Assembly (NCBI GenBank): GCA_977030845.1 | Contig: OZ365113.1 | Location: 14,384,001 to 14,448,000, forward strand | Direction of reading: 5' to 3' | DNA: 64,000 nt | Source of the DNA: Fimbriosthenelais zetlandica | Lineage: Eukaryota | Shown: in pieces, positions 3,001 to 50,800 of the stretch | Numbering within the stretch: position 1 is the first letter of the stretch | Layout: the number at the start of each line of letters is the position of its first letter | Translations under genes and position numbers: made by a program | Notes under the pieces: model-generated | Seen by the model: the letters and a program-made list of their open reading frames with translations, nothing else | Database searches by the model: none | What the model was told of the DNA's origin: nothing

Positions 3001-5982
3001 ATGACGTCAGGGACCCCAGGGCCAGGGCATATAATTCTCATAGAAGTGCCTTGCTGGAGACTACATGTCCTCTGCGTGCTGACCTTTAGCATGTAGTAGC
3101 TGACCCTTCACAAAAGCTGACCCCCAAAACCGCCCAGAGACATGCCTCAAGCAGGTCCCTGTGGAGTAGACCCACGTCTTGCTAAGGCCATCGATTTTGT
3201 GTATTTGATATTTAAATGATATTAACTTCACTGGACACTCTTTGTCTGCAGCGTATTTCACATAAGCCCTCATAAAATCCTCCACTGGTCGGTAGCATTA
3301 GACTCGTTGTGGGCCTTCTCAGATATATTATATTATCTTGAGCATTAAGGCTAGTCCATTGTGGACCCAATGGCTATGAAATATGGATTGCCTTCTACCA
3401 CTGCAGGGAGGGAAGGTCATGGTTTCTAGTGGGTGGGACGAGCTTGGTTTAAGCAAGAAAGATGACTACAGGAGGAAAAACAGCCATCATACATCATGCG
3501 TGCAGGCAATTTGTTGTGGTCAGTGGCAGAGGTGTAGAGATCAGCAATGAATATGGAATGAGAAATACATGTAAAATCACATAGTGATGAATAGACTCAT
3601 GCATCCCTTCAGCCTCTAAGCCAAGAAGTATATTCAGACTAGTTTTACCCTATAGAATATCTCAAATTGCCTTTGATAGTATCTCCACTTCCACATCCCA
3701 ACATTTTTCTTATTAATATTAATATAATGTTCTGGCTTAATTGATGTTGGTTCATGTAAGGAAGCTGCATGCAGATATATATGGTTCATGTCAACCATCA
3801 GCATGGCATGAATTTTGGTGATATATATGATTCACATTGTATTGTGGATGTCACCCTTTTTGACAAGAATTGGATGTACCATGTAAAACTATTGGAAATT
3901 TCCTACTTATGGAGGTCTAATGTGTTTGGCTAGGATTGCTAGCCGTGTTTAAGGGCTGCAGTAGCCGCTAGTAGTTGGCTTGTATTGCAATCATGAAGCT
4001 GGAGCTGGAGACTGGTTATTGATGCATGGGCTGATCCTTGGATTTACGACCCGCTGACATGCAGCTCTCTTCAACGCTAGGAAAGTACCAACGGCTGAGC
4101 TTGAGCAAGGGTCACATCAAGCCATCCGACTGACAGATTTGTCAATGGCAGTGAGATAAAGCAGATGATGATTATTCAAATTGAGACACTAATCAATTGA
4201 CAAATCACTGAATGACCTCTCAAGAGAAAAGGATCCACTGATGTGATTCACTGATATTCTTGCAATGAGTGACATTCAAAGATTCAGATGATTGGCTTGG
4301 TCTGGACCCTATATGGAAATCTGAAAAGGGGTAGGGCTTCAACCTACCTTTTAGCCTAGTAAATTGCGTTCCTCTTATCTGCATTTATAATATATTTTCG
4401 ATTTATATTTGTGACTGACCTTCGGTCAATCCATGGTTAAATTAGCTTCGGAAAATATGTGTATTGTATTAGCATGTATTAACATTTGATTAAAATCAAC
4501 CAAAAGCTATGCATATTCTGTATACGCCCAATACCATTATATCCCATTTTCCTATTATAGTAAAATTTTCTTTACAATCCTCGGATATCAAGGGCAACTT
4601 CCATGTATACGCTAGGCTTCCCGATCACATTAAGCCCCTCTAAGGGATTACCATTTGTCCTGAGACATGCAGCACTGCTTACCATGTTGGGATTTATGAC
4701 AAGTTGTCAGTGGCTGCCCTTCATACCCTAATATAGGCTTATAATAACCAGTGAAGGGCAGACGTGAGGCAGCATGCTAAGGAGATATTAACTTTGCCAG
4801 GGTTTGAACATGCCATAAGCAAATGATGTTCTCCTCATTGAAGGCTTCGTAGACTCGTCTACTTTTACTCGAACATATGTACACGTATAGGGATCTACCT
4901 TTGGTGCTAAATGACCAATATTTAGGATATATTGTTATAATATTAACATTTTTTCCAGTATATGTTTGTTTTGAAATGTTGAGGTATTGTAAAGTGCATG
5001 GATGCTGGTTTTATTCAGGTTAAATGTATCCAGATGATGAGGCGCTCAAAGGGAAAGGTTTGTCATTCCTGCCTGTTGGTTAATAGAAGCCATTAAGTTG
5101 TGTGTTCTGCTTCAGTCTCGTATTATGCCATTGAACATATGAACTTTTTAATTATTATCAATCATCAACAATTATTTATTAACTGATTGAAATCTCTATA
5201 TCGCTTCTACACTCTAAACGCTGCCAAACTTGTTCAGTCTTTTACAGTCATTCTTCGGATTGCTAGATTCACTCCTGAAATTTTTTAACATGAATTTGAT
5301 GATGGTAAAAGACTGTTCTAATAGGGTGTGCGTTCAAAGTGGCACATGTGCATTGCAGCATTTTATCCAGTGAATTGTAGCAATTTAAATCAAAAAAGAA
5401 CACTACACTATTCAATACCAATTTTGATGTGGTTTGTTTTAGCTTCGCTTTACAATCCAATGAAATGCATTTCCAAATTAAAAAGGCGACATTTTGTATT
5501 CCCCCACAAATTTATATGTTCTCCTCATTGCTGCAAATATGCTTTATTCCTCTTGAATCTTTGGAAGGAATATCAATATTAATTAGGGATTACGTCAGAC
5601 TATTTCACGGATTGTGTTGTATACATAAAGCCTTCGCCATTCGAACTCAGGCTTTATACCTCCACAACACAACTCGTGGACTAGCTTAGGTAATTAATCC
5701 CTCAATAAAAACTCGACGCTTCATACCAATAAGTATGCCTTAGAATCAAGGCTTTATGGTTATGAGTAGTATATAAAGAAGGAGGCAGCAGGTCTAATTA
5801 AGGCATCTACATATGGAGGGATAAATCCCAGGCCAAAAAAGACAAAAATATCAGTTACATAGGTATTAGGTAAACGTCCTGAACCTTTAAGGCTAATGTG
5901 TATTTTTATATTTAAATCCTGTTATTCGAACATCCATTTCCTCGGCCTCATGATTTTAACAATGCTTTCTGCTCTCTTTCAG

Positions 5983-8307
5983 GTCCTGACACCTCAGAAA
6001 TTTGGAGGCGTGTATGTTTATGACCAACCAAACGCTGGTTACCAAGACTACGATGTACCTCCATCCAGGTACTTTCCGAAGCAGATGCCGCCTGCCGGAC
6101 CCCAACAGTCCTTTGACGGTCCACAGGCTTTATACGACACCCCGAGTTCCTTGATCAGTAACAAACGAGCCGTGAACAGTGATGTTACTGAAGTCTATGA
6201 TGTTCCCCCACCAGCTGCTCATGCTCACATTCCAGGTGGTGCCCTCTATCCAGCCTCTAATCGTTCAAGTACAGCCTCCATGCGTTCCACTGGTTCCACC
6301 ATGAGCAGTATGTCTAGTCCTTGTGGTGCTACTGGAAGTAACCCACCCAGTACTTGTGGCTCAACACGCTCAAGCATAGAAGTACAGGATATATATGATG
6401 TGCCTCCTCCAGCTAAGGCAGTAGTACAACCCGCCAAATCTCCCCTGGTAATAGACCAACAACAATGCACTGTGGATCCAATGGGCATATATGACACTCC
6501 ACCAAAACAACCCGGTGCCAAGATTCTCATAGAGGACTTCGATCATGAGGCGTCTCAGAGAGATGCTGATTCAGGTATAGAAGCTTTTAAGGAGGAGAAT
6601 GCCTATGAAGCACCTCATAATAAGAGCTTTAGTGGCGAGAGAAGAGAACATTATATTGATGATATCTATGACAGACCCACTAACAATGCCCGGGCTGTAG
6701 CATGGGGCCAGCAGGGTCGTGTACAGGGCTTACAGGTTACAGGGGGTACAAATGATGGCTCTGTATATGACATCCCACCTCAGGTGACCAGGGACTCGGC
6801 AATTTCTATGCGTTCGGACACTAGTTCTCTCCTTGATGATATAAGCAATAGATTGTCGTCCTGTAGTGTTGCTTCTAGTGGTTGTTCCTCTGATATTCCA
6901 CCTATACCTTATGACGAGCTCCCACTGGACATTGACTCTGCCATGGAACTGTTGGTCAAGCTTCAGCAGGAAGTGCACAGTGCCACTTCCAGGCTGCTCA
7001 GTTTTGTACATAGCTCATGGCGCGAGCGCAGTGAACTTGAACCAAAGCTTTATGACATTCGCTTAGGCTGCCTAGGTGTGCAGGCCACACTGCAGGAGTT
7101 TGTAGATTTTGGACAAGGTGCCTTGGCCAATTCAGCCAAGGCTGATGACAAAAAACTGGTCAAAAAGCTCAGTCAGCTCCTTGAGCCTTTACAAGGAAGC
7201 AAAAAATCGGTCAACAAATGCTTGCAACATCTTAATGAAATTAAATGGGCCATTCACGAACTGACAGATTGTGAGAAACAGGGGGAGGCTGATGCCCTTG
7301 GCTGTATAGTGTCCCAGGCCAAGGACATCCCAACCAATGTTAGGACAATGGCTTCCTGCATACAAGGAAATTCAACTTTACTTTTCAAAAGGTCAACGCA
7401 GCAAGATGAGAATTCATCATCTGCCCAGTCATCACCAAAGAAAGCTCCCCCAGTCCGGCCCAAACCACCGGTTCTTCCAAAACCAAAAGGGCCGGTCAAG
7501 CAGGAGGTCACCCTTGAACGGCGGACCAGCGTTCAAGACCGGCCTTTGCCACCTCCGCCACAAATGCAGGAGCTGGCTTCTCCAGGGATGGATGATCACG
7601 ATACTTCTGGTGTGTACGAGGTACCACACGGAGATGAGGAGCCTGAGGATGACAAAGTCAAGTACACCAAGGCTGACTTCATGGAGGATTATGACTATGT
7701 GCACCTGGAGAATCGCCCGCCTCACAATCAAGACAGTGCAGGAATCGGAGGAGAGGATGAAACAGACAGTGGCATTGTTTCCAATGATTCAGGATCTGGT
7801 CTCAGTGCCAGATTCAAAGAACGCTTGGACCAAATACAAGGCAATGGTGCCATTGACAATAACAACACCCCTACTAAAACCAGCCACAAACATACCTACC
7901 TTCATCCCAATGACAAACAGTTATTGATGTTCTATGCTGGACAAGTAAGCACCCACACCACGCAACTTGTGAATGCAATCGATGCCTTCTTCCAGTGCAT
8001 CGAATACACTCAGCCTCCTAAGGTGTTCATAGCACATAGCAAGAATGTAGTACTTGCAGCTCACAAAATGGTTTACATCTGTGACACTTTACACAGGAAC
8101 TTGATGAGTGAGGAGGTGAGAGTGAAGGTGATGGCATGTGCTAATTATCTCTGTGACTGCCTCAAGCTCACAGTGAATACCACCAAGAATGCAGCCCTAC
8201 AGTTTCCTAATGTCGTCACTGTACAAGAGATGGTTGACAGAGTGGTGGACGTGTCACACGCAGCAAACGAGATCAAACTCCTCATCACGCAAGCAGCAAT
8301 ATTATGA
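5983..8307 (+). CDS. BCAR1: Terminal coding exon of a Cas-family adaptor (p130Cas/BCAR1/NEDD9-like); SH3-encoding 5' exons lie upstream of the window
   Basis: Acceptor ctctctttcAG ends at 5982 and the exon opens in phase 0 with VLTPQKFGGVYVYD. About 10 YxxP substrate motifs (YDQP, YDVP x3, YDTP x2, YEAP, YDRP, YDIP, YEVP). Src SH3 ligand RPLPPPP and Src SH2 site YDYVHL. C-terminal FAT-like domain (QPPKVFIAHSKNVVLAAHKMVYICDTL). Stop TGA 8305-8307. The first 29 aa of the ORF-track protein are intronic read-through. Which vertebrate paralogue is closest cannot be resolved. Confidence 0.95.
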   Translation, partial: VLTPQKFGGVYVYDQPNAGYQDYDVPPSRYFPKQMPPAGPQQSFDGPQALYDTPSSLISNKRAVNSDVTEVYDVPPPAAHAHIPGGALYPASNRSSTASMRSTGSTMSSMSSPCGATGSNPPSTCGSTRSSIEVQDIYDVPPPAKAVVQPAKSPLVIDQQQCTVDPMGIYDTPPKQPGAKILIEDFDHEASQRDADSGIEAFKEENAYEAPHNKSFSGERREHYIDDIYDRPTNNARAVAWGQQGRVQGLQVTGGTNDGSVYDIPPQVTRDSAISMRSDTSSLLDDISNRLSSCSVASSGCSSDIPPIPYDELPLDIDSAMELLVKLQQEVHSATSRLLSFVHSSWRERSELEPKLYDIRLGCLGVQATLQEFVDFGQGALANSAKADDKKLVKKLSQLLEPLQGSKKSVNKCLQHLNEIKWAIHELTDCEKQGEADALGCIVSQAKDIPTNVRTMASCIQGNSTLLFKRSTQQDENSSSAQSSPKKAPPVRPKPPVLPKPKGPVKQEVTLERRTSVQDRPLPPPPQMQELASPGMDDHDTSGVYEVPHGDEEPEDDKVKYTKADFMEDYDYVHLENRPPHNQDSAGIGGEDETDSGIVSNDSGSGLSARFKERLDQIQGNGAIDNNNTPTKTSHKHTYLHPNDKQLLMFYAGQVSTHTTQLVNAIDAFFQCIEYTQPPKVFIAHSKNVVLAAHKMVYICDTLHRNLMSEEVRVKVMACANYLCDCLKLTVNTTKNAALQFPNVVTVQEMVDRVVDVSHAANEIKLLITQAAIL

Positions 8308-14585: not shown

Positions 14586-16214
14586 GCATTAATTTTCGCG
14601 TGTACATAGGTGGCTTCTGATGTAAATAGATATCTATAAGATGTTAACTGTGTCATAACAAAATTGTTCTATTGTAAAAATGTACAGGATGACTAGTCCA
14701 ACTTTTGCCCACGCATTTCCACGATAAGATTTATCATTTTCATCGTATGTAGTTATTTCATCGGTATACACGTGCGGTCAAGTCAGATTAGGTGAGGCTG
14801 GCTTTGTTGCTACATTATAATATTATAATTGTCAAAACATTCATTTGCTGGCAGGTCCAGTTATAAGAAAACACTGTTAAAATACTGCATATATATATGT
14901 CTGATCAAATCCTCTATGTAATTTCCTATAGGAGATCTCTGCTTTTTAAATACGCGTATTGAATATTGTAAGATGGATTTATGTATAAAATAAATAAGGT
15001 ACGAAATAATGTGAACTTACTATTGCATTTGCTCTTTAATAGTAAAATACTTATGTTCCCTTCCCGGCGTCATTATTTAACAAGAGAAGGCTATTAGGGA
15101 ATTGTTGGGTAAAAGTGTGACATTGTCCGCGTTCAAGGTCGCGCTGTTTCGGAGTAGGCATAATGAGTGTCTTAGTATGGTGCATTAAGCCCGCCTCTTC
15201 AATTGAAGCTAATCGTTCTCCTGGATGATGTCATATATATTAATGGTTGTGTTTGATCAGCCATAATGAATGATTCTGACATCAAGGTCTCGTTATATTT
15301 GGATCAATTGATGGCTTTATCCACCTCATTGCATTCCTGTCCCACGAGCACTAGCAACATAATACGTCCTCGATAATCACTCTTATACGACTGGTAATAT
15401 GACGACGTTCTTAAGATTTTACATAGTGAATTGAAGTGAAAACAAATTTCAGAAATGTCCCTCCTGTATGTGTTACAAATGAAAATAAATGTATTTAGTA
15501 TTGAAATAATTATGACGTGTTGAGCGAAAGAGTCTGATGTTCAGACAGGTAGAATATATAGAAATTAATGTGGCCGAGATGTGGGCCTATATAGAGGCGC
15601 ACTTTGAGTGACCACGCCTTGTTCAGCTCATGTACATCTGGTTTATCCATACTCGGCGCTTAATTAATCCTGATATACTCGCCACCGTATATCCTACCCT
15701 TACAGGACGGTCCCGGAGGCTTAGCGCTGCATGTTCTCTCACCAACAAGTATACTAATGGCACCACTTCCGATCACACGTGTATGCACCGCGCGTAGCTA
15801 TTCTTTAGCTACAATTAGCATCGCACTGCCCAGTCCCCACCATGAGTATAATGGGACACAGATGGATTTCAAAGTCCAGCATCCAATACTTTAAAAAGGA
15901 TTAATTCCAGCTGGCGTTGGACAATAACTAAAAGAGTCGTCTATCTAAAAGTCGTGTATGTGAGCATTAATGCAGTATTCATTGGAAAGTCTCTTAACCA
16001 AAGGATATTTCAATGTTAAAGAGTATTGTATGTTTTATTGACTTATATACATTGTTTCACTTTCATTGGGCGCAGTGACCTTATACACAAAACTGATGGA
16101 GGAATTTATTTATTTATAAATGTATTCAGTGTGTGGAATTCAGTTTGGAAAAGGTGAGGTCAACTTACGAGTAGATCTTCTGACTCTGGCTGATATGATT
16201 TTGTAACAGTTGGC

Positions 16215-19200
16215 ATGTCTACAGACTCCTTAACTAATCCTAAACAGACCAGCATGTCGGAGTGGAGCAAGGCTTGGATGTTTGAACTGCCTTTCCTGCT
16301 GTATGCCTACATGGATGTTTGGGCTTTTCCAACGGATGGCCCAACAGGATTTATCCCACTTTCAATGTGTCCAGCTGTTGTACGAAGTCTGGAGCCAGAA
16401 AGCAATTCACAGTATAGAATAATAGTCCAGCATCCTGCAATAGAAACCAAAGCAGGCTACCTGCCAGGAGTCCTTTATGAAGGTAAAATTTAATGTCCAA
16501 ACCAGTCTATGTAAAATATTCAATGTATTTTGTTTGTATCATATTATATTTATTTTGTGTATACAATGACTGTCTTGCGATCTAATCTTACAGTGGGATT
16601 GAAACCGGTCAACGATAGCATTGCCCAAAAATACATCCTCCGCTCATTTCACGACAGTTCTGGTCAGTCTTTTGGGGACTGGTCCAGTAATGTTAGTAGG
16701 AAAGAAACTAATCTATGTAGAAGTCAGCCCGAAATAAATGAGAAAGCTGCCAGTATTAGCCATGGAGAATGGACTGGAATCATGTTAAATACGTCAGATG
16801 AAATAGTGCACTGGGGTGCACCAAAGACGACAGAACTAGGTTGTGTCCGTTTTATGTAAGTAATCGTTAGAGTTATTTTTTAAAAGCCGCGCGAACCCCT
16901 ATGGGCTGTTTTTATAATCCACTGTTGGTCAATACATTATGAAACATTCCAGTTTCTGTATTCCCACTTTTTTACAATTTCACTTAGTGGAAACCATGGT
17001 GGAAATATATGATGCTATTGACACACATGTAAGTAGTATGTAGAGGTTGACCATTGAAACAGGTTCTATGAATACGGATGTTCAATGAATTATACATTTC
17101 AGAGCATATATATTAGACACGAATGGGAAGTGGTCTGCTGCAACGAGTCGATTGTGTGAGCGTGAAGGTTAGATGTGCATTAAAAATAATTATTTTGCAG
17201 AATTTTGAAACTATATTGAGCGCCCCGGTAAGCTGTATAGCTAATTAGTATCTAGCTATACAGGTGCATAAGAGGTATATGAAATATTGGTGAAATTGTC
17301 ATATTTACGCTTATTTCTAATCTCCTGTAGGTTATTTTCGTGTTGTTTCCACAACGAGTGAATTGATCATTTCTGGGGGTGATGGAGGAAAATACTTAAA
17401 CAACATGGACCACCTTGTATTATTTCAATCTCGGCTTGGTTATGAAATGAGACTTCAAGTGAGTACCGGTACCTGCATTTGAATATGAATTTAAGCGTCA
17501 GAATAGTCGATTTAATTAGCTTTTGTTACGAATAGAAAAGAATGTTTTCTGTCGAACCATGAAAGGAAATATGGCATTTTCACTGCTTGAACTTTTTTTT
17601 ATTTTCGAATAGCCTACTTTTAAAATTCACTGCCCTTCCCCCGGGCCGAGCAATCAGTGCATGGCATATTATGTATACATTAAGCTGGCAATATTGATGC
17701 ACAATCATGTTTTTCTGGTCCTCGATATCTATATCGGGTGGCTGGATTTATATTTAGACAACTGAAGCAGTTGTTCAATATTACATGGGTCGGGCACAGG
17801 GTCCACAGTATCTGGATGGGCAGGTTTGGATGACAATGTATTTGAGCTGGCGGGATGAATATTGGACGATGCTACATTCAGGTGCGCTTTGCGTTGGGAA
17901 ATGCGTCATTTCAGGCACGTGCCAGCTAGTCGGGACAGTGCTTTTGGAAGTTTTATGCCCATTCTGAAATTCAAATGCAACCATGAATAATAAATCACCT
18001 TAGTCTATGAATGAAGGTCATTTTAGAAACCGTAATTCTTGTGTAATTGCATAATTGGAATTACTCAGAATATTTCCCACGAATCTGAACAGTTCTATTC
18101 AAGCTACATTTTTTTATTTTGGGTAGACCTAATAGGACTAATATACATACGGGATTTGTACAAAATACATTATTATAGGAATAAAAATATAACAAATGGG
18201 GCGGGGAGTGGTGGGTGCGGTTCCACAGTCTTGATTAGCGACTCTGCAAAGATTAAAGGTACCGCAGGGTAGAACAGACTATGAACATTGAAGAAACAGA
18301 TCAATTCATAAAATCAACTGTTTCTTTTAAAGTTTCAGCATTTTGATATAGAACCCTTTCTTGATGAGGAGGGTCGGTGTTTTGACTATGTGAGTATTGG
18401 GAGCACAGAGGTAGAGGCAGAGGATGAGTCGCGGCGATTGTGTGGACGATATACAAGGGTCGACCTGGCGAAACTTTCATTTGTCTCTGATGAAAATTTC
18501 ATGGTGCTGAAATTTGTAACCGACGCCAAAATCGTCGCTTCTGGATTTTCTGCCGTTTTCTACTCTGTTCCTACTAAAGGTAGGTACGCGATGAAATCGG
18601 AAAAACTGTTTCATGGTGTTGAGAAAAAGTGCAATTTGATTTCCCTCCTAGAAAGATTTTAAAAAGTTTTCTTCTAAAGGATAGCATTTCATTTCAGGAT
18701 GCAATAAGGTGTTGTTCGGATCTCGTGGCATCATATCCTCTCCGAATTTTCCAGACGAATATTTCCCCAATTATGACTGTACATATACCATTGACGCACC
18801 TCGTAACTACAGGATATCAGTGACCTTCACAAACTTTTCTCTTCAACCGAAGGTCAATGGAAAATGTCACGATTATGTTTCAGTAGAAACTACCAGATCC
18901 CAGAAGGCATCTAAGGAGTACTTGTGTGGGAGTGAGTTGAAAGTTTTTACCTCCTCCTTCAATTGGTTGCGCTTGACTTTCCATACTGATTTCCTCGAGC
19001 AGATGTCGGGCTTCAGAGCTGAATATATGAACTATAAATCATGTGAGAATGTCACTTATGACGGGTCAAATGGAAGCATATCAAACATGGGATATCCAGG
19101 ACCCTACCTTAACAACCAGCTCTGTTTTATCACTATTAAAACGCCTGATGAAGGCATGAAAATAGACATTCAATTTGACCTTCTTCACACAGAAGCTATT

Positions 19201-31235: not shown

Positions 31236-33880
31236 TCAATAATCAGCTCCTAACAGTCTTTTCTTCACACAGGTCAGATGTTTCATGGTGTGTTCCAGTT
31301 TCTCGACACTCTGAGCAGAGATCCCTCCACACAGAGACACATCCAGGGTTTTCAGGTGAGGAGCATGCGCGGCCAGAGCTTCCATACTTGTGTCGGTGAT
31401 GGCATCGCAGTTTGATATGTTGAGGAAGCGGAGTCTGCGGAGGCGGAGGATGATAAAGATGAGGCCCTCGTCCGTGATGCGGCGACACTGGCTCAGATTG
31501 AGGATCTCTATAGTTGGAGCATTGCTTCCTATGGCGATCAGCGCAGCGTCCGTTATGCCTGAACACATGTTAAGGTGCAGCTCCTGGAGCTCATTGAACC
31601 TGACGGCATCGCGAATGCTGGCATCGGTGATCTGCGGCATCGCAGAGAGATCAAGAACGCGAAGGAATCGCAGGTTAGAGATGGGATAAATAGAGCCAGC
31701 TTGATGGGCGTGGTTGGATTTGAGAACCTCAACATGCTCTTCACTCAGCTCTGCTGGAGGCTTGTCAGGAAGCAGAGAGGCGAGGTCACCAAAGATTTTA
31801 GATGGTTGACGTCTCACCGGCGGGGGGTTGGAGTCGTGTGGGGTGTGGCGCTCAGTGCCAGCATCAGGGTTAGGCACACCAAGGAGGGCAAAATCTGTGA
31901 CTTCTTTACACCACGAGAGACGCAGGAATCTAAGATGACCAAGGTACTTACATATGTAATTGACACTCATGTCACGGACTCCAAAACATGAACCAATATC
32001 AAGATGAAGCAAACCAGGAGTGGATTTGCATAGTTCAGTAATAAACGAGTCCTTCACACCACTACAACAGTTGAGGTTGAGATGGGTGAGGGAACAGGTG
32101 GCTGGACCTTGACAAAGACCTCGAACCAATCCAGGCGATGTGAGACTGTAGCAAGAAGATAAATTGACCTCTTTCAAAAACCTCATGTTAGCCAGTCTGC
32201 TAACAGCATTATCTGTGATCTGACGACACTTGCTAAAACTCAGCATCTTCAGGTTTGGTAGCCGTGCTGTAATAACATGGAGAGAAGCGTCTCCCAGGTC
32301 CACACATTGAGCAATACTGATCCTCTTCAGAGAGGTTTGATTCTTACACAGCTTGGCAATGCCTTCGTCTGAGATTTCCCTGCAGGAATCCAGATAGATC
32401 TCTTCAAGTTCTAAATCCGGCATATTGGCAAGGCTTTCCAGTCCACTGTCGTTGATACGAGTGTGACCAAAATCAAGGACTTTAATCTTTCTTGCGTTGG
32501 AATGAATATACTTGGCGATATTTTTGAAGGTCAAGACAGCGGTATTGTTACAGGCCATATCTTCTGGTTCCCCTGAGTAGACTCGGGTATGGACCATGAT
32601 CTGACATCCAGACAATGAAAGCTTCCTTAGATTAGGCGCGATAAGCATGAACCTATTGAAGGTGGAATCAGCGAGATAACGGATGGAAGACAAGTTGATT
32701 TCCTTCAGTGTCCCCAGCTTGGCTCTGAGCAGGTCCACGTCCTGTTGTTTGGAGAGCAGCACTCCAGCCATAAATAGGCTATTGCAGCAACTGAGATCAA
32801 GACTTTCAAGGCTGTCACATTGAGAGAGAAGAGTGATCAGCATGGCTTCTGATATGTCAGTTCCCCTCACTGACAAACTTTGCAAGCCTTCACACATTGC
32901 CTGACAGTTGCCTAATATGAGATTCTCTGCTTCGATGTTCTCCAGTACAAGATGAGGATTTCTCCTTTCCACAACTTTCTGCACGGGCTCGGATGATGAT
33001 GCCTTTGGTATAAGGAAGACTACATCTTGGAGGAGGGCAGGAGCGCGCGATGCTTCATACCAGGTACGGTTGACCAGCGCTGCATCCTTCCTATCTGACA
33101 CACTCAGGTATTTGAGTATGTGTGCCACTACCTAAAGTTTAATAAAATACAACAGTTTATTTTAATAAGTACCGGTATATCGACAATACCTTATATATGA
33201 CAATGAAAATATGACAATGAAAATGGTTTATTTGACACACAGTGTACAGTTTATATCGGCACCTTGTTGATTATTATTAACCTTGTTAATTATTCAATGC
33301 CTACCTTTTATATTAATTTATTTCGTACAATTTTCTTAAGAAGTTACAAATCTTTCTGGTGGCCTTCTATCTTCACTTTTACAGCTTGGTTTTACCGTAC
33401 ATTCTGTCAGAATGCAGTCTTAGTTTAAGTTTTTCTGGTCTTTCCTTAACAGTTTTCACAAACACAGAATATTCCTTGTTATATTGTTTGTTGCAATATT
33501 AGGAAGTGACAAACGATGTCCTACATGTATGTTACAATATAGAGAATAGGTTCTAGATAGAATTCAAGCGTTATTGATTTAATTGGCGCCCATCACCACG
33601 TCTTATGACTATGACTGTAGTGTAGGCCCTACACCTCGTGACCCGTCGGCCGTCTACGCCGCTACGGCCTTGCTGGGCTTGGCCGGGCCCTCACAATAAT
33701 GCATTTTTCAGGTTCTGTAGTTCATACAATCGTTAATTGAACTAATTTTCAACAATACAAAGTAAATGAGGGCGAGTGTTTTCTAAACAAATGGATTTCG
33801 CAATGTTGACGATCATTCTAGAAGATTTAATCTAAAAAATTTATAATTATTCTCACCTCCGCTGGCAGCCTGTCCGCCAT
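31236..33880 (-). CDS. LRRC29: F-box/leucine-rich-repeat protein, LRRC29/FBXL9-like, 639 aa, 2 coding exons
   Basis: Exon 1 33880-33857 (MADRLPAE, donor GTGAGA) joins exon 2 33131-31236, giving the F-box LPAEVVAHILKYLSVSDRKDAALVNRTW. Many cysteine-containing LRRs follow (LxLxxCxxITDxxL). FBXL class is secure; the specific LRRC29 assignment is from remembered similarity only. Confidence 0.85.
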
Positions 33881-34110: not shown

Positions 34111-37100
34111 ATGGCGACGTACATCTCTATTCCGCGACGACTCCCGATACTTTTGGCCGAAAATGTCATCTTACCAGGATCTTCCATTCGTATTTCTGTG
34201 AGAACTATGCGCAAGTAGGTATTTTGATGTATATTCTTTAAACTGGGGTTCGTGCTAATCGAAAAATCGTGTTGTTTTCATACGACACGTGCCGTTATCC
34301 TGTTTGGGATGATGCCACTGATGGGCGGGGCAATGGCCAATGCAAAGGCAGGACTGACTGTAGAATGCTTAATGCGGGAATAACACTTACAGTCTATTTA
34401 AGTTAACTGATCCTTTATCAAATATCTTACTTACATTTACAGTTTGAACTTGGTAAAGTCTCGTCTACTTGGAAAGAATACTCTCAGCAGTACGATCATT
34501 GGTGTCGTCCCCAAGGAATCTAACGACGAGGTTAGTATTGACTATTGTCAGTATTTTGTTTGACTATTGTGTTTTAGACAGTCGATGAGGTAACACGACT
34601 GAGCCATCAGCATTTCAACATTATTCAGATTAACCTTTATTTAAAAGAATATAGTTATACTTAAAGTGTAGTTGGAGTGTATGTAGATAAGATAACGCGA
34701 AAATGACTGTCAGGGTAATTTCTTATCTCACAGAATGATGACATGTCTTCAGCTCATGTGATTGGTACAGCAGCTGTAGTTGTTCAAGTGACGGGAACAA
34801 ATTGGCCGAGACCTGCTTATACTTTGCTGGTGACTGGTCTATGTAGGTTTAAAATAGATGCACTTCTACAAGAAAGTCCATACCCCGTAGCCAGAGTAAC
34901 TCAACTGGACAAGCTTTCAGATGATGAAGGTACAATGTATACTCAATATGTCATATTTAATATAAAAATTAATAAAGGGTCTAAGATGTAAGGTAATATA
35001 AAAGTAATGGTACCAAATAAGCCATGGTGTGGAGTACCGGTTTAAATAACTATATTCATTACAGCAGTGACCGCCTACTAAGCCTTTGGCAAGTTGTGGA
35101 TAAAATCGGTCTTTTAAATCCATCGTTTACAGATGACGAACTCAAGACTAATTCGGAGTTGGCAGACATCGCTGAAAATTTTAGAGAACAGGCGTCTAAA
35201 CTCGTCGATATGTTAGACATCTCCATCCCTGTAGTAGCCAAGCTCAGGGTTTGTATAACAATTTCTACAGCACTTAATTATTAAATTTATCCTGCATTCA
35301 GTTGAATTATATAAGGTTCAATGAATTGTAGTATTATAGGATAATAATATTACCGGTATGTACTTATTGATATTGAGAGTTCCACATTAACAGTAATCCC
35401 TATAATCATTTTCTTCTTCCTTCCTGCTTCAGAAAATGTTGGACAATGTACCCAGCCATCATTTGCCAGATCTGTGTACCTCTATCGTTAAAGCCTCTTA
35501 CTCCGAGAAGCTTCAGGTGCTGGATGCAGTAGACCTCCGTGAACGCTTTCAGAAAACATTGCCTCTCCTCATGAGGCAGATCGAGGTGAAATATTCCCTT
35601 AAATTTCTCATTGACATTCTAAATATTAATAACCAAGAATGTTAGCTTTGATTATAACCTCATGTTTAATCTTCATTTGTATTTGATTATCAGGCCCTAA
35701 AACTGTTGAACAGAACCAAGAAGACCACTTTGGAAATTGTCTCGAGGAACCCTAATCGCCCACGACCAGCCAACCTCAAAGTTTTCAGGAATTTTTCGGA
35801 AGATGATGACGAAGATACAGACGAGATGGAGGAATTGAGAAGCAAAATTAAGTAAGTTATTTCTCTGTATCTAATCTAGATTATATTATAATTTATATTT
35901 TCAATTTAATGAATATACGCAAATTTATTTCCTCACTTCATTATCTCTTGTAGGACCGCTCAATTACCAGACCATGCTCATAAAGCTGCCATGAAGGAAT
36001 GGAAACGTCTGAAGAAAATGCCAGCTCAAATGCCGGAGCATGCCATGATCAGAAGTTACCTGGAACTCATGGTGGAACTACCATGGTCTAAATCCTCTAA
36101 AGATGCTTTGGACATCGCACGTGCCAGGTAAAATAAAATACGCAAAGTCACTTATTACGTTGCACAATTATATAAGACAGCCATGTGACAGGAGTTTGAC
36201 CCATTCACTTAAAAATGTAATAGTAACTAGGTCTATCTAATATACATTCATTTTGCTTATTTCAGGATAGATCTTGATGAAGATCATTATGGATTAGACA
36301 GAGTGAAGAAGCGTATTATAGAATATTTAGCAGTCCGACAACTGAAGAACTCCCTGAAGGGACCCATTCTCTGTTTTGTGGGGCCTCCTGGTGTTGGAAA
36401 AACGTCGATCGGGCGGTCAATAGCACATACCTTGGGGAGAGAGTTCCACAGGTAGATGCACTGAAATTATAGTGGCGAGAAAAATATAGGTTTTAATTTA
36501 ACTTTACATTTATTCGTTACAAGATTAAATAACAACCTGAAGATATAATATATGTTATTGTGTGATTTCAGGATTGCGTTGGGTGGTGTATGTGATCAGT
36601 CAGACATCCGCGGCCACAGACGGACCTATATAGGATCAATGCCTGGACGAATCATTCAAGGCTTGAAGCTTGTGGGGGTCAACAACCCTGTCTTCTTACT
36701 TGATGAGATTGACAAACTTGTGAGTATGTTCTTCATTGTAATATTTACTTTTTGGAATCTATTTTTATTTCCCAGTCCTGAGGTGAAAGGATATGCCCCA
36801 GAGAGCATAGGGTCAGCTTTTAAACATTTTTGTACATGTTTTGTTTTATGTAGACCGCCAGCCTTCATGGAGATCCAGCTGCTGCTCTTCTGGAGGTTCT
36901 TGATCCGGAGCAAAACAGTACCTTCACTGATCAGTATCCTTTATTATGAAAAGAGAATCTCAGTGGTAATAGATGTATTTTTAAAATTTATTTTTCTTAT
37001 GCAATTGTAAACCGTAGAGTATTATAAATCAGATGACAGATTTTTATCTTAAATTTCAAGAGAAAGGAACAAAATCAACCTTAACTCAGTGAGCTATCTG

Positions 37101-39140
37101 AACGTACCGTTTGACTTGTCTCAAGTCCTCTTCATCGCCACCGCTAACAGTATGTCCACCATACCTCCAGCCTTACTGGACCGTATGGAGCTGATCACTG
37201 TACCTGGCTATACGCAGGAGGAGAAGATAGCTATAGGTCAGAGACATCTCATCCCTAAACAGCTGCGTGAACATGGCCTCACCTCTCAACAACTCATTAT
37301 ACCAGAGGACTCAGTCAAAGTCATCGGTGAGTGCTATTACAGTCTGTCCAAAGTAAGTTGATCCGAAACTACAGTACAAATGTATGGTCGTTTAGGATCA
37401 ACTTAGTTTGAACAGACTGTACGTATAAATGCTGTTTCATAAACTTTACAGTGCCATATTTTATTTTAAAAATCAGAAACATTTTCCCGATACATGTAAA
37501 TAAAAAGTATGGTATATTGAGTAAAATAATATTACCAATGGCCTATATATTCTCTTTTTCAAAGACCGTAGATTTACAGCAGTAAACCACCAGTAAATTT
37601 GTATATAAAAGCTTTATTTTTTTGACCAACAGCATCAAAGTACTCCCGGGAAGCGGGTGTACGGGCCTTAGAGAGGAAGATAGGAGCTGTGTGTCGGGCT
37701 GTGGCTGTGAGAGTAGCTGAAAATATCGTGGATGATAAAGCCAGTAAAGCAGTCCCAGATAAAGCTCCTGATAACAGCAAGATGGCGCTGCCTCCCGACT
37801 ACCCGATTGTCATTGACGAGACTGCTGTGGAAGATATTCTTGGGGTTAGTTTTTCTTCAGTTGCTCAATTCTGAATCATTTTGTGATCTTATATTTCATG
37901 ATACAAATTTGGTAAATCATTGTTAAGATATTCTCTTGCACACTTTATTCAAATATCTTATAAGAAAATGTGTTTGCCTACCATTATTTCTACTTCATTT
38001 ATAAAATGATATTTTATATTTCCATGAAAATTTCTAGCCCCCTCAGTATGAGAGTGAGGTCTCTATGAGGCTGTCACAGCCAGGCGTGGCTGTGGGGCTG
38101 GCGTGGACGGCCATGGGTGGAGAGATCATGTATGTAGAGGCGAGCAGGATGGAGGGGGAGGGTAAACTTACCCTCACTGGTCAGCTAGGTGATGTGATGA
38201 AAGAATCAGCCAACCTGGCGCTCAACTGGGTCCGCAGCCATGCTGACCAGGTAGGTTAGACCAACTAAAGTTAAAACCTCTCAAGTCAAGTGTATATAAG
38301 TGTAAAGAATACCATGTAATAATTTACCACAATAGTATATATTTTCAATAAACAAAATAGATATTTTCCCCTTAAATTATAAGGTTTTCCCTAAGAAAAA
38401 TTTGTGATGTGTCTCTGTGTTTTACAGTTGGGTCTCAGTAAGAAGTCGGCTTTGCTGGGTGAGACGGACATTCACATTCACTTCCCGGCCGGGGCTGTAG
38501 GTAAGGACGGACCTTCTGCCGGTGTTACCATAGTCACTGTTCTAGTCTCGCTCTTCACCGGACGTTGTGTGAGATCTGACACGGCCATGACGGGCGAGGT
38601 TACACTGAGAGGACTCGTCCTCCCTGTAAGTCAATTACCAGTTTAATGACTACTTAAATCATTAAAACATGTATGAATGAAATATTTTTTCTGGACTCGA
38701 AATGGTTGAATTAGATTGAGAATGCCAATAAATATCGATGAGAAAACCCTCGTGTAAATTGGTTAAATATTTAGTACATTTTAATGACTAATTTTAATTT
38801 TTTTAGGTTGGAGGTATAAAGGAGAAGGTGCTCGCTGCACACCGTGCTGGAATCACTAGAATTATTTTGCCAAAACGGAATGAGAAAGATCTCCATGAAG
38901 TCTCAAAAAATGTTCAGGTATGCCTTCCTATCAATCACCTTATTTCTGTTACATCTAATTTAGAAGAAAATGCAATTGCTGACTTCGTAATAGATATTAT
39001 ACTGAACATTAAGTTATGTTTCCTTGCAGGCTAATCTGACCTTCGTCTTTGCCAACTGTCTGGAAGATGTTCTCGAAGCTGCCTTTGATGATGACTTCCC
39101 CGAACTATCCTCCCCTCCACCCATCCAAAGCAAACTATGA
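34111..39140 (+). CDS. LONP2: Peroxisomal Lon protease homolog 2, 16 exons, 826 aa
   Basis: Exons 34111-34214, 34443-34530, 34734-34929, 35133-35248, 35433-35585, 35694-35851, 35954-36127, 36266-36451, 36572-36719, 36854-36933, 37094-37326, 37633-37844, 38038-38250, 38428-38625, 38807-38917, 39030-39140 join in frame. Walker A GPPGVGKT, Walker B LLDEIDK, catalytic Ser in KDGPSAG and Lys in GGIKEK. C-terminal PTS1 signal SKL-stop. Confidence 0.98.
36934..37093 (+). other. U12-type (minor spliceosome) GT-AG intron, LONP2 intron 10
   Basis: 5' splice site GTATCCTTT at 36934-36942. Branch-point CCTTAAC at 37079-37085. No polypyrimidine tract. The acceptor GAG ending at 37093 restores [14 protein letters not shown]. 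Confidence 0.88.
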
Positions 39141-46363: not shown

Positions 46364-47807
46364 ATGTGGTCTCAGAGCCTTATACAGCAGGTGGAGGAGG
46401 AGGTGGGTGAGGAGGAGGAAGAGGGCTTACCCAGAAAAAGTTCCTTTAACACCAATACAGATCTCTCAATTGGAAAAACATCATCCAAAAGGTGGAGTTC
46501 AGGTAACAACAGTACACAGGTAGGGTCGAATAAAACCAGAACATGGCCTGGAACAATGGCGAAAACTGGCATGGAATATGCTAGATCATCACCCGAGGAG
46601 GGTGATGAGGAGGCAGGCAGAGGGAAGGGGGTCCCACTACCCCTTGATAAACTCACACTTCAGTGGGATCAACTGGACAATTGGAACGATCCATACAGCA
46701 TCAACGGACGTGATTCCGGCATCCATCTTGATGAAGACAGCAGGTTAGATCAATCAGGATCTGATTTGAGATCAGAACAATCTTTTTCTGATTTGAGATC
46801 TGATCAATCTAACACTGATCTTAGCAGACTCAGCCAGTCCAGCCCTGATCTGGGTATCGCTCATTCTGAACCGGACCTTCTCCGACCCAACCTATCTGAT
46901 CTCTATGCCTCCTGTCAATTCACCTCAGACCGCACTCTTGACCAATCGGACCCTGATATTTGGGGTGTTGATGATAATCATGCTTGCATCAGTGATGAGG
47001 ATGTTGACGATGACCAATCCACCCCAAGACATCATCCATCTTATCTCACACCTGATGCTAATACAATTGATATTGATTCCTGCCGGCGGCTTGATGCCGC
47101 TGAACCTAATGAAATGCAGAAAGTATCCCACCCCTTGACTATATCTATATCACAAAATGATGACTACTTCTTATCAGACGATGAAGTGAGTGAACAAGAC
47201 AGTTCCCAAGATAGCAGTAGCCTCAGTCCCTTGGCTTTACACGGTGGACAAATCTACAAAACACGTGGCTTTACTGATCTCTCCCTTAACACCGAAGATA
47301 ATCTCTTACCCCTCAAAGACTCTACAGATATGAAATTGCTCTCCATCGATCCTCGACCTTCCCAGAGATCACCACTGGGTGATCATTTCGAAGGCAACTC
47401 AATAAGCCTTAAAGAGTGGACAGATGGCATACAGATGTATGCAAACGATTTCGACCTGGAAGGGTATCTGACGGGTGAAGGCATCATACCAGAAAGTAAC
47501 CCATTTCATCCACAAACCCTCAAAGACGGCCAGTATTTGGACATCAGCTATGAACGACGTAACACGCGTCCCAAAGACTTCTGGGCTGATGATGAAGAAG
47601 ATGATGAGGAAGATGAGGGATGTGGCGATTCGAGCAGTGGAGGCGACCGTCGATTCTCCTTTGAAGATGAGTTCTTTCTGGAGGGAGGCGAGGTAGACTT
47701 CGACGGAGATTGGGAAAACACCACATCGAGCTTTCTCAACTGGGTTCCTCAATTCTCGCATTCCCCCGGCCTCCGACCAATATCCAACTACAGGATATTC
47801 CAACCAG
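46364..47807 (+). CDS. Orphan acidic, Ser/Asp-rich, probably disordered 481-codon exon; likely first coding exon of an unidentified gene
   Basis: Stop-free 1.5-kb ORF in AT-rich DNA. Context accATG with an in-frame TAA just upstream. Possible acceptor ending at 46345. Probable phase-1 donor CAG|GTTCGT at 47807/47808, after which the ORF becomes AT-rich and intron-like. No recognisable domain. Confidence 0.65.
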
Positions 47808-50800
47808 GTTCGTTAATATTGCCATTCGTTATATTTTTGTCATTAACTTTCTTGGGGTTATCACGCGTTTATTCAAATATTTACATATTAAGAATAACGC
47901 AAGAAATTGTTTGAAAATATTTGTCAAAAACCAACATATGAATTAGAGAAGGTTTTTAGGTGGTATAAAAAGTTTCCCACACAACCTCGAGCTCGTCCCA
48001 GAGACCTACGTGTCTTTTCCATGGCCGAGGGCAGTGTATGCAACGCGGAGTCACGTCATGTGAGGCCCTGGGCAGACGGTAATTTTACTCTCTCTAATGA
48101 CTTCTATTAAAGCTATATACTCTTCCCTCCTCGACCAGTCAAATTCTTTCTCCTTTATAGTGAGATATGGAGTTTTTTGGTGTCTATTTTACCAGGCACT
48201 TCTCGCTCAATGTGAAGGAAGATGCCTTGCTTTAGGAGAAAGGGGGTGTTATTTAAGACTTGTGTCAGACAGTGAAAGGTGGATGTTTTTAAGAATGGTT
48301 TATCTTTTCTCTAACTTTATATGTTTTACCTGAAGGAACAAATCAGACCAGAACGCAGAATGTTGTCTTTTGTGAAAGGTAATGATTTGAAAAGTGGTCT
48401 GAAGAAAGTCACTTTCTCGGTCTTACGTACCCCTCCAGAAATCTTTTGCAATGGACTCCTTTTCCCGACCTCAACTGATTCTGAAACGCACATAATGTAC
48501 CTTCCTCAGGTGATGTTTTCAGAAGAATTAGATGTCCATCTTCCTGATCCAATGCAGGTTTACATATAGTGAACAGAGCTACGAGCATGTTTAATCATGG
48601 TTCACTTGTGTTTCTTGTTGCTTGACTCTATTGAAAGTCAAGAACAGGGTCGATTGTAAAGATCTAAGCTTGCCCTGCGTGCAGATTCATTCATGCAAAC
48701 CTTGTGAATGGTATATACATGTACATGTAGTTAGGACAGAATGACTGAGTAGACTGTTGACGAACTGACAACTATAATTCTATTTTCCACTTAACTCGGA
48801 AAGTGCTTATTATGGTTCGAAAAAGAAAGTTTTCTCTTTAACTTTCTTTTTTTAAATACTATAAGATGGCCCAGTCTGCATATATATTATGCACGAATGT
48901 CTATATATGCGTAATCTAGATACAAATCTTTATAATATTTTAATTTATATCTTCCTTCATAACATTTGTTTCATGTTTTCATTGAATTGCATTGTAATTG
49001 AGAATGTTAATTCTTCATTCAGAAAAGATTTTGAGCTTTCGGTATCTCTTTCTTTGTTTACCGATTGGACTAGTTTTTGTGTAGTTCTTTCTAAGCCGAC
49101 ATATGTCTTGAGGCTTGGTATCAACTTTGGCATGGGAATACCCTCAGGCATCATTTAAACTTAATTGCTTAATTGATAATAATGGATTCTTGGAGGAATG
49201 GGAACGAGGAATGCGAATTTAAATTTTATGATACAAATAATTCATTCAGTTTTGGAAGGATTTTATGTAATAACTTTTTAGTCATGTGTACAAAGAGGAT
49301 CAATGTTGCGTGACTGATATTGTATTAATTGGGTCAGAACTATTTCTATATCCTACTGGAATGATAATTTGCTGGCATTAGTCCAGAGTAAATTTAGGTT
49401 AGGTATTAAATGAATCAGAACTGCGGGAGGCACATGTTAGGGGATACAAATGCCAAATCTCAGTAGGGATTCACTCTGATTTGGATGAGCAACTATTCAC
49501 ATTTTATTATCTACAATTGGCATTATGTGATTTAGACGAGAGTCTGTTTGCCCATGTCCAAATTAATCATATATATGCACAGTAAAGAGGTCTTTTGGCT
49601 TGTGTTTTCATCACATGGATGTGGGTGCATCATTGTTGTATCATTTGACCTCCCTGAATCTGCTTTGTCACAAAAGGATGCTATGTTGAATGGGCCTTTG
49701 CCCTGACAAAAAGATTTGCTAGTGAAATATATACCCATAGAAGTGTAGGGAACACTTCTATGATATGCCCTAGCTTTTTATTTGCAAGAGCTGAGATGAA
49801 TGGAAATGCTTAATTTAGGAACGTCCAGGAGCTAGTTGAGGCTTTCTCTACTTATGGCCTCGAGGCTTCTGTAGATATTAAAACGTCGAACTCTGCTTAG
49901 TCTGTTCTTGGGCCTATCAGCTATTCAACATGTGGAAACATGTAAAAAGGTTTTATTTGGGAAATATGGGCTATACATATATAGACAGTAATTTTGATGT
50001 GAAAATAGGACAAAATGTCCTGGCAGCGCGGAATATTCACAATGACGTCAGAAATAGGCGCTTTTGGAGCCAAATTCAGAGAACGCCATGTGTCCAAAAC
50101 TGGACCCAGGGGACGTCCATTATACCTAGAGGGTACCTGAAAGGCGTCATTACTTGTCAGCTGTTGGACTTTGATCCCAAATATTAAATGAATTGCGTGG
50201 AAAATGTATCGGTTTAATCACAGCCGATGTGACGTCTTTTATTTACTGTGGGGAGATTGGGGAATGGCCTGGTAATTTTTTTTTTTATCTTACAACAGTT
50301 TTATCTTACAAAACAGAGGGTGTCCCCACAGCCTATTCCGTCCTATAGCGGTCTTTTTACTTTCCCATTGACAAATAAGTTGATGTCATTACGCCTAATT
50401 ATAATGCATTGTCATAAAAATATAATGCATTATCATAAAGCAATAAAATAATGATAAGAATTATAGTGGCTAGGATACAATGTAATTCTTATAATTGTAT
50501 AATTATGTAATGTATAATTATACTGATCATACTTGTGATATTCATAATATATTAGTATAACATGTATGTACATTATATTATGAGATAATGCGTTTATAAA
50601 TAGCCTATATGTATATAGGCCTACGTACATGTTTGGTTTGTATTGGTATTGTAGATGAGAGATAGATGATATGGGGGAGGCTGTATACTAATTACCTAAT
50701 GCGAGGCATGCCCAGGAGGAGGCACTGTGGCGTGATTCTCCTTCTACTCCATAGATCATGGGGAAAATCAATCTCAAGGGACCGCATGGAAGCGATACAT

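What the first reader, a model, noticed from the sequence alone, without database searches (positions are those of the whole stretch)
36934..37093. Minor-spliceosome (U12-type) intron inside the AAA+ domain of peroxisomal Lon
Seen: donor GTATCCTTT, branch point CCTTAAC 8 nt before the terminal G, no polypyrimidine tract, and an atypical GAG acceptor. The nearer CAG (37087-37089) is out of frame. It is the only such intron among about 45 I modelled in this window. Established: RTATCCTTT plus CCTTAAC define U12 introns, which are rare, ancient and can be rate-limiting for expression. Inference: this organism has a working minor spliceosome and LONP2 output may depend on it. I do not know whether LONP2 is a catalogued minor-intron gene or whether this position exists in vertebrates or plants.
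Basis: partly seen in the sequence, partly recalled or inferred. Interest (0 to 1): 0.72.

Follow-up and report, generated by a model that had tools for sequence, protein, structure and literature searches.

The report
Ancient minor-spliceosome intron in peroxisomal Lon
One of the 15 introns of this invertebrate's peroxisomal Lon protease gene carries the signals of the rare "minor" (U12-type) splicing machinery; the same intron sits at the same codon in sponges, placozoans and plants but is missing from vertebrates, so it is a real but ordinary conserved feature.

Summary
The stretch 36934-37093 is the tenth of 15 introns in a 16-exon, 826-aa peroxisomal Lon gene (CDS 34111-39140, ending in -SKL).

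- **Splice signals:** the donor is GTATCCTTT. The branch site ACCTTAAC lies 9-10 nt before a GAG acceptor. A nearer CAG is out of frame.
- **Machinery:** the genome encodes U11, U12 (two copies), U4atac and U6atac, all above Rfam thresholds, and PDCD7 (the U11/U12-59K protein). Its own U12 pairs with the branch site over 9 bp, leaving one A bulged.
- **Catalogued match:** the donor 12-mer is identical to that of the catalogued SLC35B4 minor intron of human and mouse.
- **Conservation:** an intron at the same codon and phase, with U12-type signals, occurs in Trichoplax, the sponge Sycon, five unnamed animal contigs and plant-type LON2.
- **Absence:** a fish and a rat lack it. LONP2 is absent from the MIDB human and mouse minor-intron tables. 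The same genome's LONP1 also lacks it.

My verdict is a genuine GT-AG U12-type intron, probably older than the plant-animal split and lost in vertebrates. I rate it a new member of a known kind, of modest interest.

No RNA runs were listed for this organism, so the GAG junction rests on reading frame and conservation alone. The scan's earlier notes report two other U12-type introns in this genome (ZNF830, ADAM10).

The parts
34111..39140 (+). Coding region of the peroxisomal Lon protease (LONP2-type) gene: 16 exons, 15 introns, 826 aa, ending in -SKL then a stop
   Evidence: Homology-guided model. It is 63% identical to Sebastes LONP2 and 64% to the Trichoplax Lon homologue. Single exons hit Pfam AAA and Lon_C.
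36854..36933 (+). Exon 10, encoding (T)[25 protein letters not shown] plus the first two bases (CA) of the His codon
36934..37093 (+). Intron 10: 160 nt, phase 2, U12-type GT-AG
   Evidence: No Rfam family and no unusual fold inside it.
36934..36942 (+). 5' splice site GTATCCTTT, a 9/9 match to RTATCCTTT
   Evidence: The 12-mer TCAGTATCCTTT equals that of the curated SLC35B4 minor intron. UCCUUU pairs in register with the genome's own U11 (AAAGGG) and U6atac (AAAGGA).
37078..37085 (+). Branch-point sequence ACCTTAAC (7/8 match to TCCTTAAC). The predicted branch adenosine is 37083 or 37084.
   Evidence: The genome's own U12 5'-UGAGUAAGG-3' pairs with CCUUA(A)CUCA over 9 bp with one bulged A.
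37087..37089 (+). Decoy CAG, only 5-6 nt from the branch A and out of frame
   Evidence: frameshift and stop if used; distances.
37091..37093 (+). Inferred 3' splice site GAG, 9-10 nt from the branch A
   Evidence: It is the only GT-AG pairing that restores D-H-Y-L. It has not been confirmed by RNA.
37094..37326 (+). Exon 11, encoding (H)[18 protein letters not shown]...VKVI, which contains the conserved FIATAN motif of the AAA+ module
   Evidence: The homologous position lies inside Pfam AAA in Sycon (residues 365-504) and Trichoplax (227-364).
39129..39137 (+). C-terminal Ser-Lys-Leu codons, the PTS1 peroxisomal targeting signal

Best explanation
Intron 10 (36934-37093) of a peroxisomal Lon protease gene in a spiralian invertebrate is a GT-AG U12-type intron removed by the minor spliceosome.

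Inferred mechanism:
1. U11, and later U6atac, pair with UCCUUU of the donor GUAUCCUUU.
2. U12 pairs with CCUUAACUCA and bulges out an adenosine (37083 or 37084) as the branch point.
3. The CAG 5-6 nt downstream is too close to the branch to be used. The next AG, the GAG at 37093, lies 9-10 nt away and is taken as the acceptor.
4. This joins CA|C into the His codon of the conserved D-H-Y-L motif inside the AAA+ domain.

What is shown: the motifs, the reading frame, the machinery genes and the cross-phylum conservation. What is inferred: the actual splicing pathway, the branch nucleotide and the use of GAG.

The intron is ancestral. It sits at the same codon and phase, with U12-type signals, in a sponge, a placozoan, other animals and plants. 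It was lost in vertebrates.
For: - **Motifs and frame:**
- **Outlier status:** it is the only outlier among the gene's 15 introns.
- **Chance:** about 7e-8 per intron.
- **snRNAs in the genome:** U12 at 124 and 123 bits, U11 at 103, U6atac at 103 and U4atac at 94, all above the gathering score.
- **snRNA sequences:** the recognition sequences are intact. PDCD7 (59K) is also present.
- **Pairing:** 9 bp between U12 and the branch site, with a bulged A.
- **Catalogue comparison:** the 5'ss 12-mer is identical to the MIDB-curated SLC35B4 minor intron, which scores 93-95. In that table GTATCCTTT occurs 455 times and CCTTAAC 377 times.
- **Orthologous introns with RTATCC-type donors and TCCTTRAY-type branch sites:** Trichoplax, Sycon, five unnamed animal contigs and plant-type LON2.
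- **Read-through fragments:** 30 of 30 animal genomic read-through fragments place AG|C/T at this codon.
- **Sycon junction:** two independent protein records show the same spliced junction across the U12-type boundaries.
- **Textbook criteria:** defining 5'ss and branch site, no polypyrimidine tract, and a short branch-to-3'ss distance (PMC3584512).
Against: - No RNA data: both run searches listed nothing, so the junction and the GAG acceptor rest on frame and conservation only.
- GAG is an unusual acceptor. It is the only one among the 11 loci compared.
- The branch-to-3'ss distance of 9-10 nt is just below the published optimum of 11-13 nt.
- The branch site has A instead of T at its first position.
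- Simple duplex energies with U11, U6atac and U12 do not single this intron out from the others.
Confidence: 0.88

Rival explanations
1. The intron is U12-type, but a substantial share of transcripts uses the nearer CAG (37089). That would give a frameshifted, probably degraded mRNA, so the odd 3' end would act as a leaky or regulated site rather than a clean GAG acceptor.
For: The CAG is a better acceptor triplet than GAG. U12-type 3'ss choice is described as error-prone (PMC3584512). The same arrangement, CAG four bases upstream of the used AG, occurs in locus L010.
Against: The CAG is only 5-6 nt from the branch A, far below the 11-13 nt optimum. Its product is out of frame with an early stop. 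The gene is otherwise intact.
Confidence: 0.07
2. It is an ordinary U2-type intron whose ends resemble U12 signals by coincidence.
For: The termini are GT-AG. Pyrimidine content near the 3' end (0.59) is not lower than in several neighbouring introns.
Against: The donor matches the U1 consensus at only 3 of 9 positions. The acceptor is GAG. The chance of both motifs together is about 7e-8. The same motifs are kept in sponge, placozoan and plant orthologues while the rest of the intron is unrelated.
Confidence: 0.03
3. It is not a functional intron: the gene is a pseudogene, or the GAG is an assembly error.
For: None positive. There is only the lack of RNA data and the unusual acceptor.
Against: All 16 exons are open and conserved. 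The protein ends in -SKL and keeps DGPSAG. It is the only LONP2-type copy in the genome.
Confidence: 0.02

Closest known systems
Catalogued GT-AG U12-type introns of human and mouse (MIDB, Olthof et al. 2019, PMC6717393), for example the SLC35B4 minor intron
   Same: The 5' splice-site 12-mer TCAGTATCCTTT is identical. The branch site is of the CCTTAAC type, and ACCTTAAC itself occurs 34 times in the table. The termini are GT-AG.
   Different: The host gene differs: LONP2 and LONP1 are not in the human or mouse tables. The acceptor is GAG rather than YAG, and the branch-to-3'ss spacing is 9-10 nt.
U12-type introns conserved in position between animals and plants (Basu et al. 2008, PMC2426677). 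The Turunen review counts about 20 shared by human and Arabidopsis (PMC3584512).
   Same: The codon, the phase and the U12-type signals are the same in plant-type LON2 (GTATCCTTT ... TCCTTGAT, 13-14 nt, TAG) and in animals. Most flanking U2-type positions are not shared with the plant gene.
   Different: This one cannot be in the human-Arabidopsis set, because vertebrates lack the intron. No mention of Lon appeared in that paper's supplement.
Other U12-type introns noted by this scan in the same genome (ZNF830 and ADAM10, both AT-AC)
   Same: The genome and the presumed machinery are the same.
   Different: Those are of the AT-AC subtype and lie in other genes. I did not re-check them.

Membership tests
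U12-type (minor-spliceosome) intron, GT-AG subtype | 5' splice site matching RTATCCTTT from +1 | tested here: met
   GTATCCTTT, 9/9. The 12-mer is identical to a curated minor intron.
U12-type (minor-spliceosome) intron, GT-AG subtype | Branch-point sequence of the TCCTTAAC type close to the 3' splice site (optimum 11-13 nt) | tested here: met
   ACCTTAAC, 7/8 match, with the branch A 9-10 nt from the 3' end. This is slightly short of the optimum.
U12-type (minor-spliceosome) intron, GT-AG subtype | No distinct polypyrimidine tract | tested here: inconclusive
   There is no uninterrupted tract (AACAAAATCAACCTTAACTCAGTGAG). The pyrimidine fraction of 0.59 at -20..-4 overlaps that of the U2-type neighbours.
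U12-type (minor-spliceosome) intron, GT-AG subtype | Terminal dinucleotides GT-AG or AT-AC | tested here: met
   GT...AG. The acceptor triplet GAG is atypical.
U12-type (minor-spliceosome) intron, GT-AG subtype | The genome encodes U11, U12, U4atac and U6atac | tested here: met
   All four score above the Rfam gathering scores. PDCD7 (59K) is also present.
U12-type (minor-spliceosome) intron, GT-AG subtype | Complementarity of the 5'ss and branch site to the organism's own U11, U6atac and U12 | tested here: met
   UCCUUU pairs with AAAGGG (U11) and AAAGGA (U6atac). There are 9 bp plus a bulged A with U12. The energies alone are not discriminating.
U12-type (minor-spliceosome) intron, GT-AG subtype | Orthologous introns in other lineages keep U12-type signals | tested here: met
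   Trichoplax, Sycon, five unnamed animal loci and plant-type LON2.
U12-type (minor-spliceosome) intron, GT-AG subtype | Removal depends on the minor spliceosome (junction reads, knock-down sensitivity, branch mapping) | not testable with these tools
   No sequencing runs were listed, so read laying could not be used.
Peroxisomal Lon protease (LONP2 / LON2) | Lon N-terminal substrate-binding domain, AAA+ module, Lon lid and Lon_C protease domain | tested here: met
   Exons hit AAA and Lon_C. The whole model aligns at 63-64% identity to named LONP2 and Lon homologues that carry all four domains. DGPSAG is present.
Peroxisomal Lon protease (LONP2 / LON2) | C-terminal PTS1 tripeptide (-SKL) | tested here: met
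   The model ends ...PPPIQSKL then a stop.

The most novel reading that the evidence does not exclude
The intron is a relic from the last common ancestor of plants and animals. Vertebrates lost it not singly but when the whole exon-intron map of LONP2 was replaced.

The window's gene shares 13 of its 15 intron positions with a sponge and/or a placozoan but only 1 with fish. Fish and rat share only 3 positions with any of the three invertebrates. This would fit a processed copy of the gene replacing the original and then acquiring new introns in the vertebrate (or chordate) stem. That would be an unusual burst of intron gain for that lineage.
Probability: 0.2. Interest if true: 0.55.

Novelty: new member of a known kind. 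Interest (0 to 1): 0.3.

Why it matters
It adds one gene to the set whose expression needs the minor spliceosome in non-vertebrate animals and plants. It also gives a clean example of a minor intron held at one codon from plants to sponges yet missing in vertebrates. That explains why LONP2 is absent from the mammal-centred catalogues.

The GAG acceptor with a closer, skipped CAG is a natural test case for the rule that U12-type 3' sites are chosen by distance from the branch point. None of this challenges current understanding.

Tried and rejected
- **RNA evidence:** two run searches on 36560-37330 (kinds rna and any) listed nothing, and one call was busy.
- **Literature:** full-text searches for LONP2, LON2, At5g47040 or Lon protease together with U12 or minor intron gave nothing relevant.
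- **Supplements and lookups:** the supplements of the IAOD paper, Lin 2010 and Basu 2008 hold no Lon entry. The 2024 MIDB paper has no supplements held. The Zhu and Brendel 2003 DOI is not held.
- **Duplex energies:** energies of U11, U6atac and U12 against all 15 introns did not discriminate, since pyrimidine-rich tails pair out of register. I rely on the in-register pairing only.
- **Organism identity:** a full-length search with the fish protein returned only fish and did not identify the organism. A neighbouring CAS-family exon places it among spiralians, with the best named hits Lingula, Lineus and molluscs at about 40%. The phylum is unresolved.
- **Own protein or transcript:** none was found in the protein collection.
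- **Fern locus:** the DNA was too large to fetch.
- **zf-U11-48K hits:** they are not specific to the minor spliceosome.
- **intronIC:** it is not installed, so no formal score was computed.

Full report
**The observation**

Reading the window and a script confirm each element at the stated coordinates:
- GTATCCTTT at 36934-36942 and CCTTAAC at 37079-37085
- CAG at 37087-37089 and GAG at 37091-37093

Splicing 36933 to 37094 joins CA|C into a His codon. The result reads ...[12 protein letters not shown]|[18 protein letters not shown]. Using the CAG adds four bases and runs into a stop. No other canonical pairing restores D-H-Y-L.

**The gene**

Guided by fish, thrips, sponge, placozoan and rat Lon homologues, I built a 16-exon model. 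The CDS runs from 34111 to 39140 and encodes 826 aa.
- It is 63% identical to Sebastes LONP2 and 64% to the Trichoplax homologue.
- It contains DGPSAG and ends in -SKL, the PTS1 peroxisomal signal.
- Single exons hit Pfam AAA and Lon_C.
- In Sycon and Trichoplax the homologous junction lies inside the Pfam AAA domain.

So "peroxisomal Lon, inside the AAA+ domain" holds. The genome has only one other Lon-type match to exon 11, a LONP1-like gene. That gene reads LDHYIDVPVDLSK without interruption, so it has no intron at this site.

**Is it more than chance?**

Among the 15 introns, number 10 is the only one with:
- a poor U1-type donor (3 of 9 matches, against 5-8 for the others)
- an acceptor that is not YAG
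- a 7/8 match to TCCTTAAC placed 9-10 nt from the 3' end

GTATCCTTT occurs once among 6985 GT sites in the window. The joint chance of the two motifs is about 7e-8 per intron. The intron holds no Rfam family and folds no better than shuffles.

**The machinery**

The window's genome is 447 Mb in 79 contigs. It carries the following snRNA genes, all above Rfam gathering scores and none found in the 14 control prokaryote genomes:

| snRNA | Copies | Bit score |
|---|---|---|
| U12 | 2 | 124, 123 |
| U11 | 1 | 103 |
| U6atac | 1 | 103 |
| U4atac | 1 | 94 |

Their recognition sequences are intact: U12 ...AUGAGUAAGGAAAAU, U11 5'-UAAAAGGGCC and U6atac ...GAAAGGAGAGAAGG.
- U12 5'-UGAGUAAGG-3' pairs with the intron's CCUUA(A)CUCA over 9 bp with one bulged adenosine, which is the canonical branch-site geometry.
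- U11 and U6atac pair with UCCUUU.
- Two exons of a PDCD7 (U11/U12-59K) gene are also present.
- Duplex energies alone did not separate this intron from its neighbours, so I rely on register, not on energy.

**Comparison with curated minor introns**

In the orthologue table of the MIDB paper (PMC6717393), GTATCCTTT occurs 455 times, CCTTAAC 377 times and ACCTTAAC 34 times. The window's 12-mer TCAGTATCCTTT is identical to the 5' site of the SLC35B4 minor intron in mouse and human, which scores 93-95.

The same tables contain MAPK8 but no gene whose name starts with Lon. LONP2 is therefore not a catalogued minor-intron gene in mammals.

**Relatives**

A search of 1.8 billion representatives with exon 11 returned spliced full-length proteins and many genomic fragments. 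The fragments read ...S|YLNVPFD, where Ser is AG plus the last base of the His codon. Fetching their DNA and locating both exon ends gave the table below. The distance is from the branch A to the 3' end.

| Locus | Donor | Branch site | Distance (nt) | Acceptor | Intron length (nt) |
|---|---|---|---|---|---|
| Window | GTATCCTTT | ACCTTAAC | 9-10 | GAG | 160 |
| Trichoplax adhaerens | GTATCCTTT | TCCTTAAT | 17-18 | TAG | 89 |
| Sycon ciliatum | GTATCCTTA | TCCTTGAC | 23-24 | CAG | 628 |
| Unnamed animal contig L007 | GTATCCTTT | TCCTTAGA | 10-11 | TAG | 126 |
| Unnamed animal contig L008 | GTATCCTTT | ACCTTGAC | 10-11 | CAG | 472 |
| Unnamed animal contig L010 | GTATCCATA | TCCTTAAC | 10-11 | CAG | 163 |
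| Unnamed animal contig L011 | GTTTCCTTT | ACCTTAAC | 12-13 | CAG | 383 |
| Unnamed animal contig L006 | GTATCTTTT | ATCTTGAC | 13-14 | TAG | 118 |
| Plant-type LON2 (L017-L021) | GTATCCTTT | TCCTTGAT | 13-14 | TAG | 89 |
| Plant-type LON2 (L012) | not on contig | TCCTTAAA | 14-15 | CAG | more than 611 |

- The L017-L021 exon is 86-87% identical to fern LON2, and the L012 exon 90%.
- All are at the same codon and phase. The intron interiors are unrelated.
- In Sycon and Trichoplax this is the only intron of 29 and 23 with such a donor.
- For Sycon, a RefSeq model and a separate EukProt record show the same spliced junction.
- A second search added more fragments. In all, 30 of 30 animal genomic read-through fragments have Ser before YLN.

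**Vertebrates**

In Sebastes umbrosus and Rattus rattus the exon runs straight through TDHYLNVAFD. The nearest intron lies 12 codons upstream, at LLE|VLDPEQ. So the position does not exist there, which fits the MIDB result.

**How it most likely works**

- **Shown:** the motifs, the frame, the snRNA and 59K genes, and the conservation.
- **Inferred from established knowledge** (review PMC3584512): U12-type introns are defined by the 5'ss and the branch site, lack a polypyrimidine tract, and have a short branch-to-3'ss distance with an optimum of 11-13 nt. U11/U12 would recognise the donor and branch site together, and U6atac would replace U11.
- **Acceptor choice (inferred):** the CAG at 5-6 nt is too close to the branch, so the next AG, at 9-10 nt, is taken. 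Locus L010 has the same layout, with CAG four bases before the AG that is used.
- **Dependence on the minor spliceosome:** this follows if the class is right. Whether splicing is slow enough to limit output is untested.

**Age**

Independent insertion of a U12-type intron at the same codon and phase in plants and animals is very unlikely. The simplest reading is one ancient intron. This agrees with the reported stronger conservation of U12 than of U2 positions between plants and animals (PMC2426677). My rough plant map shares few other positions with the animal genes.

**Novelty**

U12-type introns in invertebrates and plants are well known, and databases I could not query (IAOD, MIDB for other species, U12DB) may already list this one. 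I found no paper naming it. I file it as a new member of a known kind, of modest interest.

**The organism**

The organism is a spiralian. The best named hits of a neighbouring gene are Lingula, Lineus and molluscs. Neither its own LONP2 protein nor any transcript of it was found in the protein collection.

Noticed in passing
window 34111-39140 compared with L013 (Sebastes), L016 (Rattus), L014 (Trichoplax) and L015 (Sycon): The window's LONP2 shares 13 of its 15 intron positions with the sponge and/or the placozoan but only 1 with fish. Fish and rat share most positions with each other and only 3 with any of the three invertebrates. The vertebrate LONP2 intron map looks almost wholly replaced.
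   Followed up: partly
L023 (G000:C1:60185496-60188648): The mitochondrial-type Lon paralogue (LONP1-like) has no intron at DH|Y. It does have one right after DLSK. Trichoplax and Sycon LONP2 have a phase-0 intron at the homologous spot (DLSQ|V).
   Followed up: partly
P0484 and P0435 (protein fragments; DNA not fetched): Two animal read-through fragments have pyrimidine-rich codons just before the AG (FPLLFANS and PNPPPPPS). P0484 is the closest relative by identity (91%). This hints that the intron may have converted to U2-type in some lineages.
   Followed up: no
window 15689-16251 (+): ATATCCTAC at 15689 and TCCTTAAC at 16228 are followed 17-18 nt later by AC, just before an ATG at the start of the large CUB/lectin receptor gene. 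This could be an AT-AC U12-type intron but is well within chance, with an expectation of about 0.1-0.2.
   Followed up: partly
L006 (SRR28981371 contig): In the relative with the most similar complete exon 11 (82%), both the donor (GTATCTTTT) and the branch site (ATCTTGAC) carry a C-to-T change in the CC pair. Both signals are therefore weakened together.
   Followed up: no
window 5896-8307 (+), 31236-33128 (-), 46364-47914 (+): There is a large exon of a CAS-family scaffold protein (Serine_rich plus CAS_C domains). A 630-aa single-exon F-box/leucine-rich-repeat ORF lies on the minus strand just upstream of LONP2. A 516-aa ORF has no Pfam match.
   Followed up: partly
L001 (G000:C29) and L002 (G000:C19:36161811-36161961): There are two U12 snRNA genes that differ at several stem positions. 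One lies on the same contig as the window, about 22 Mb away.
   Followed up: no
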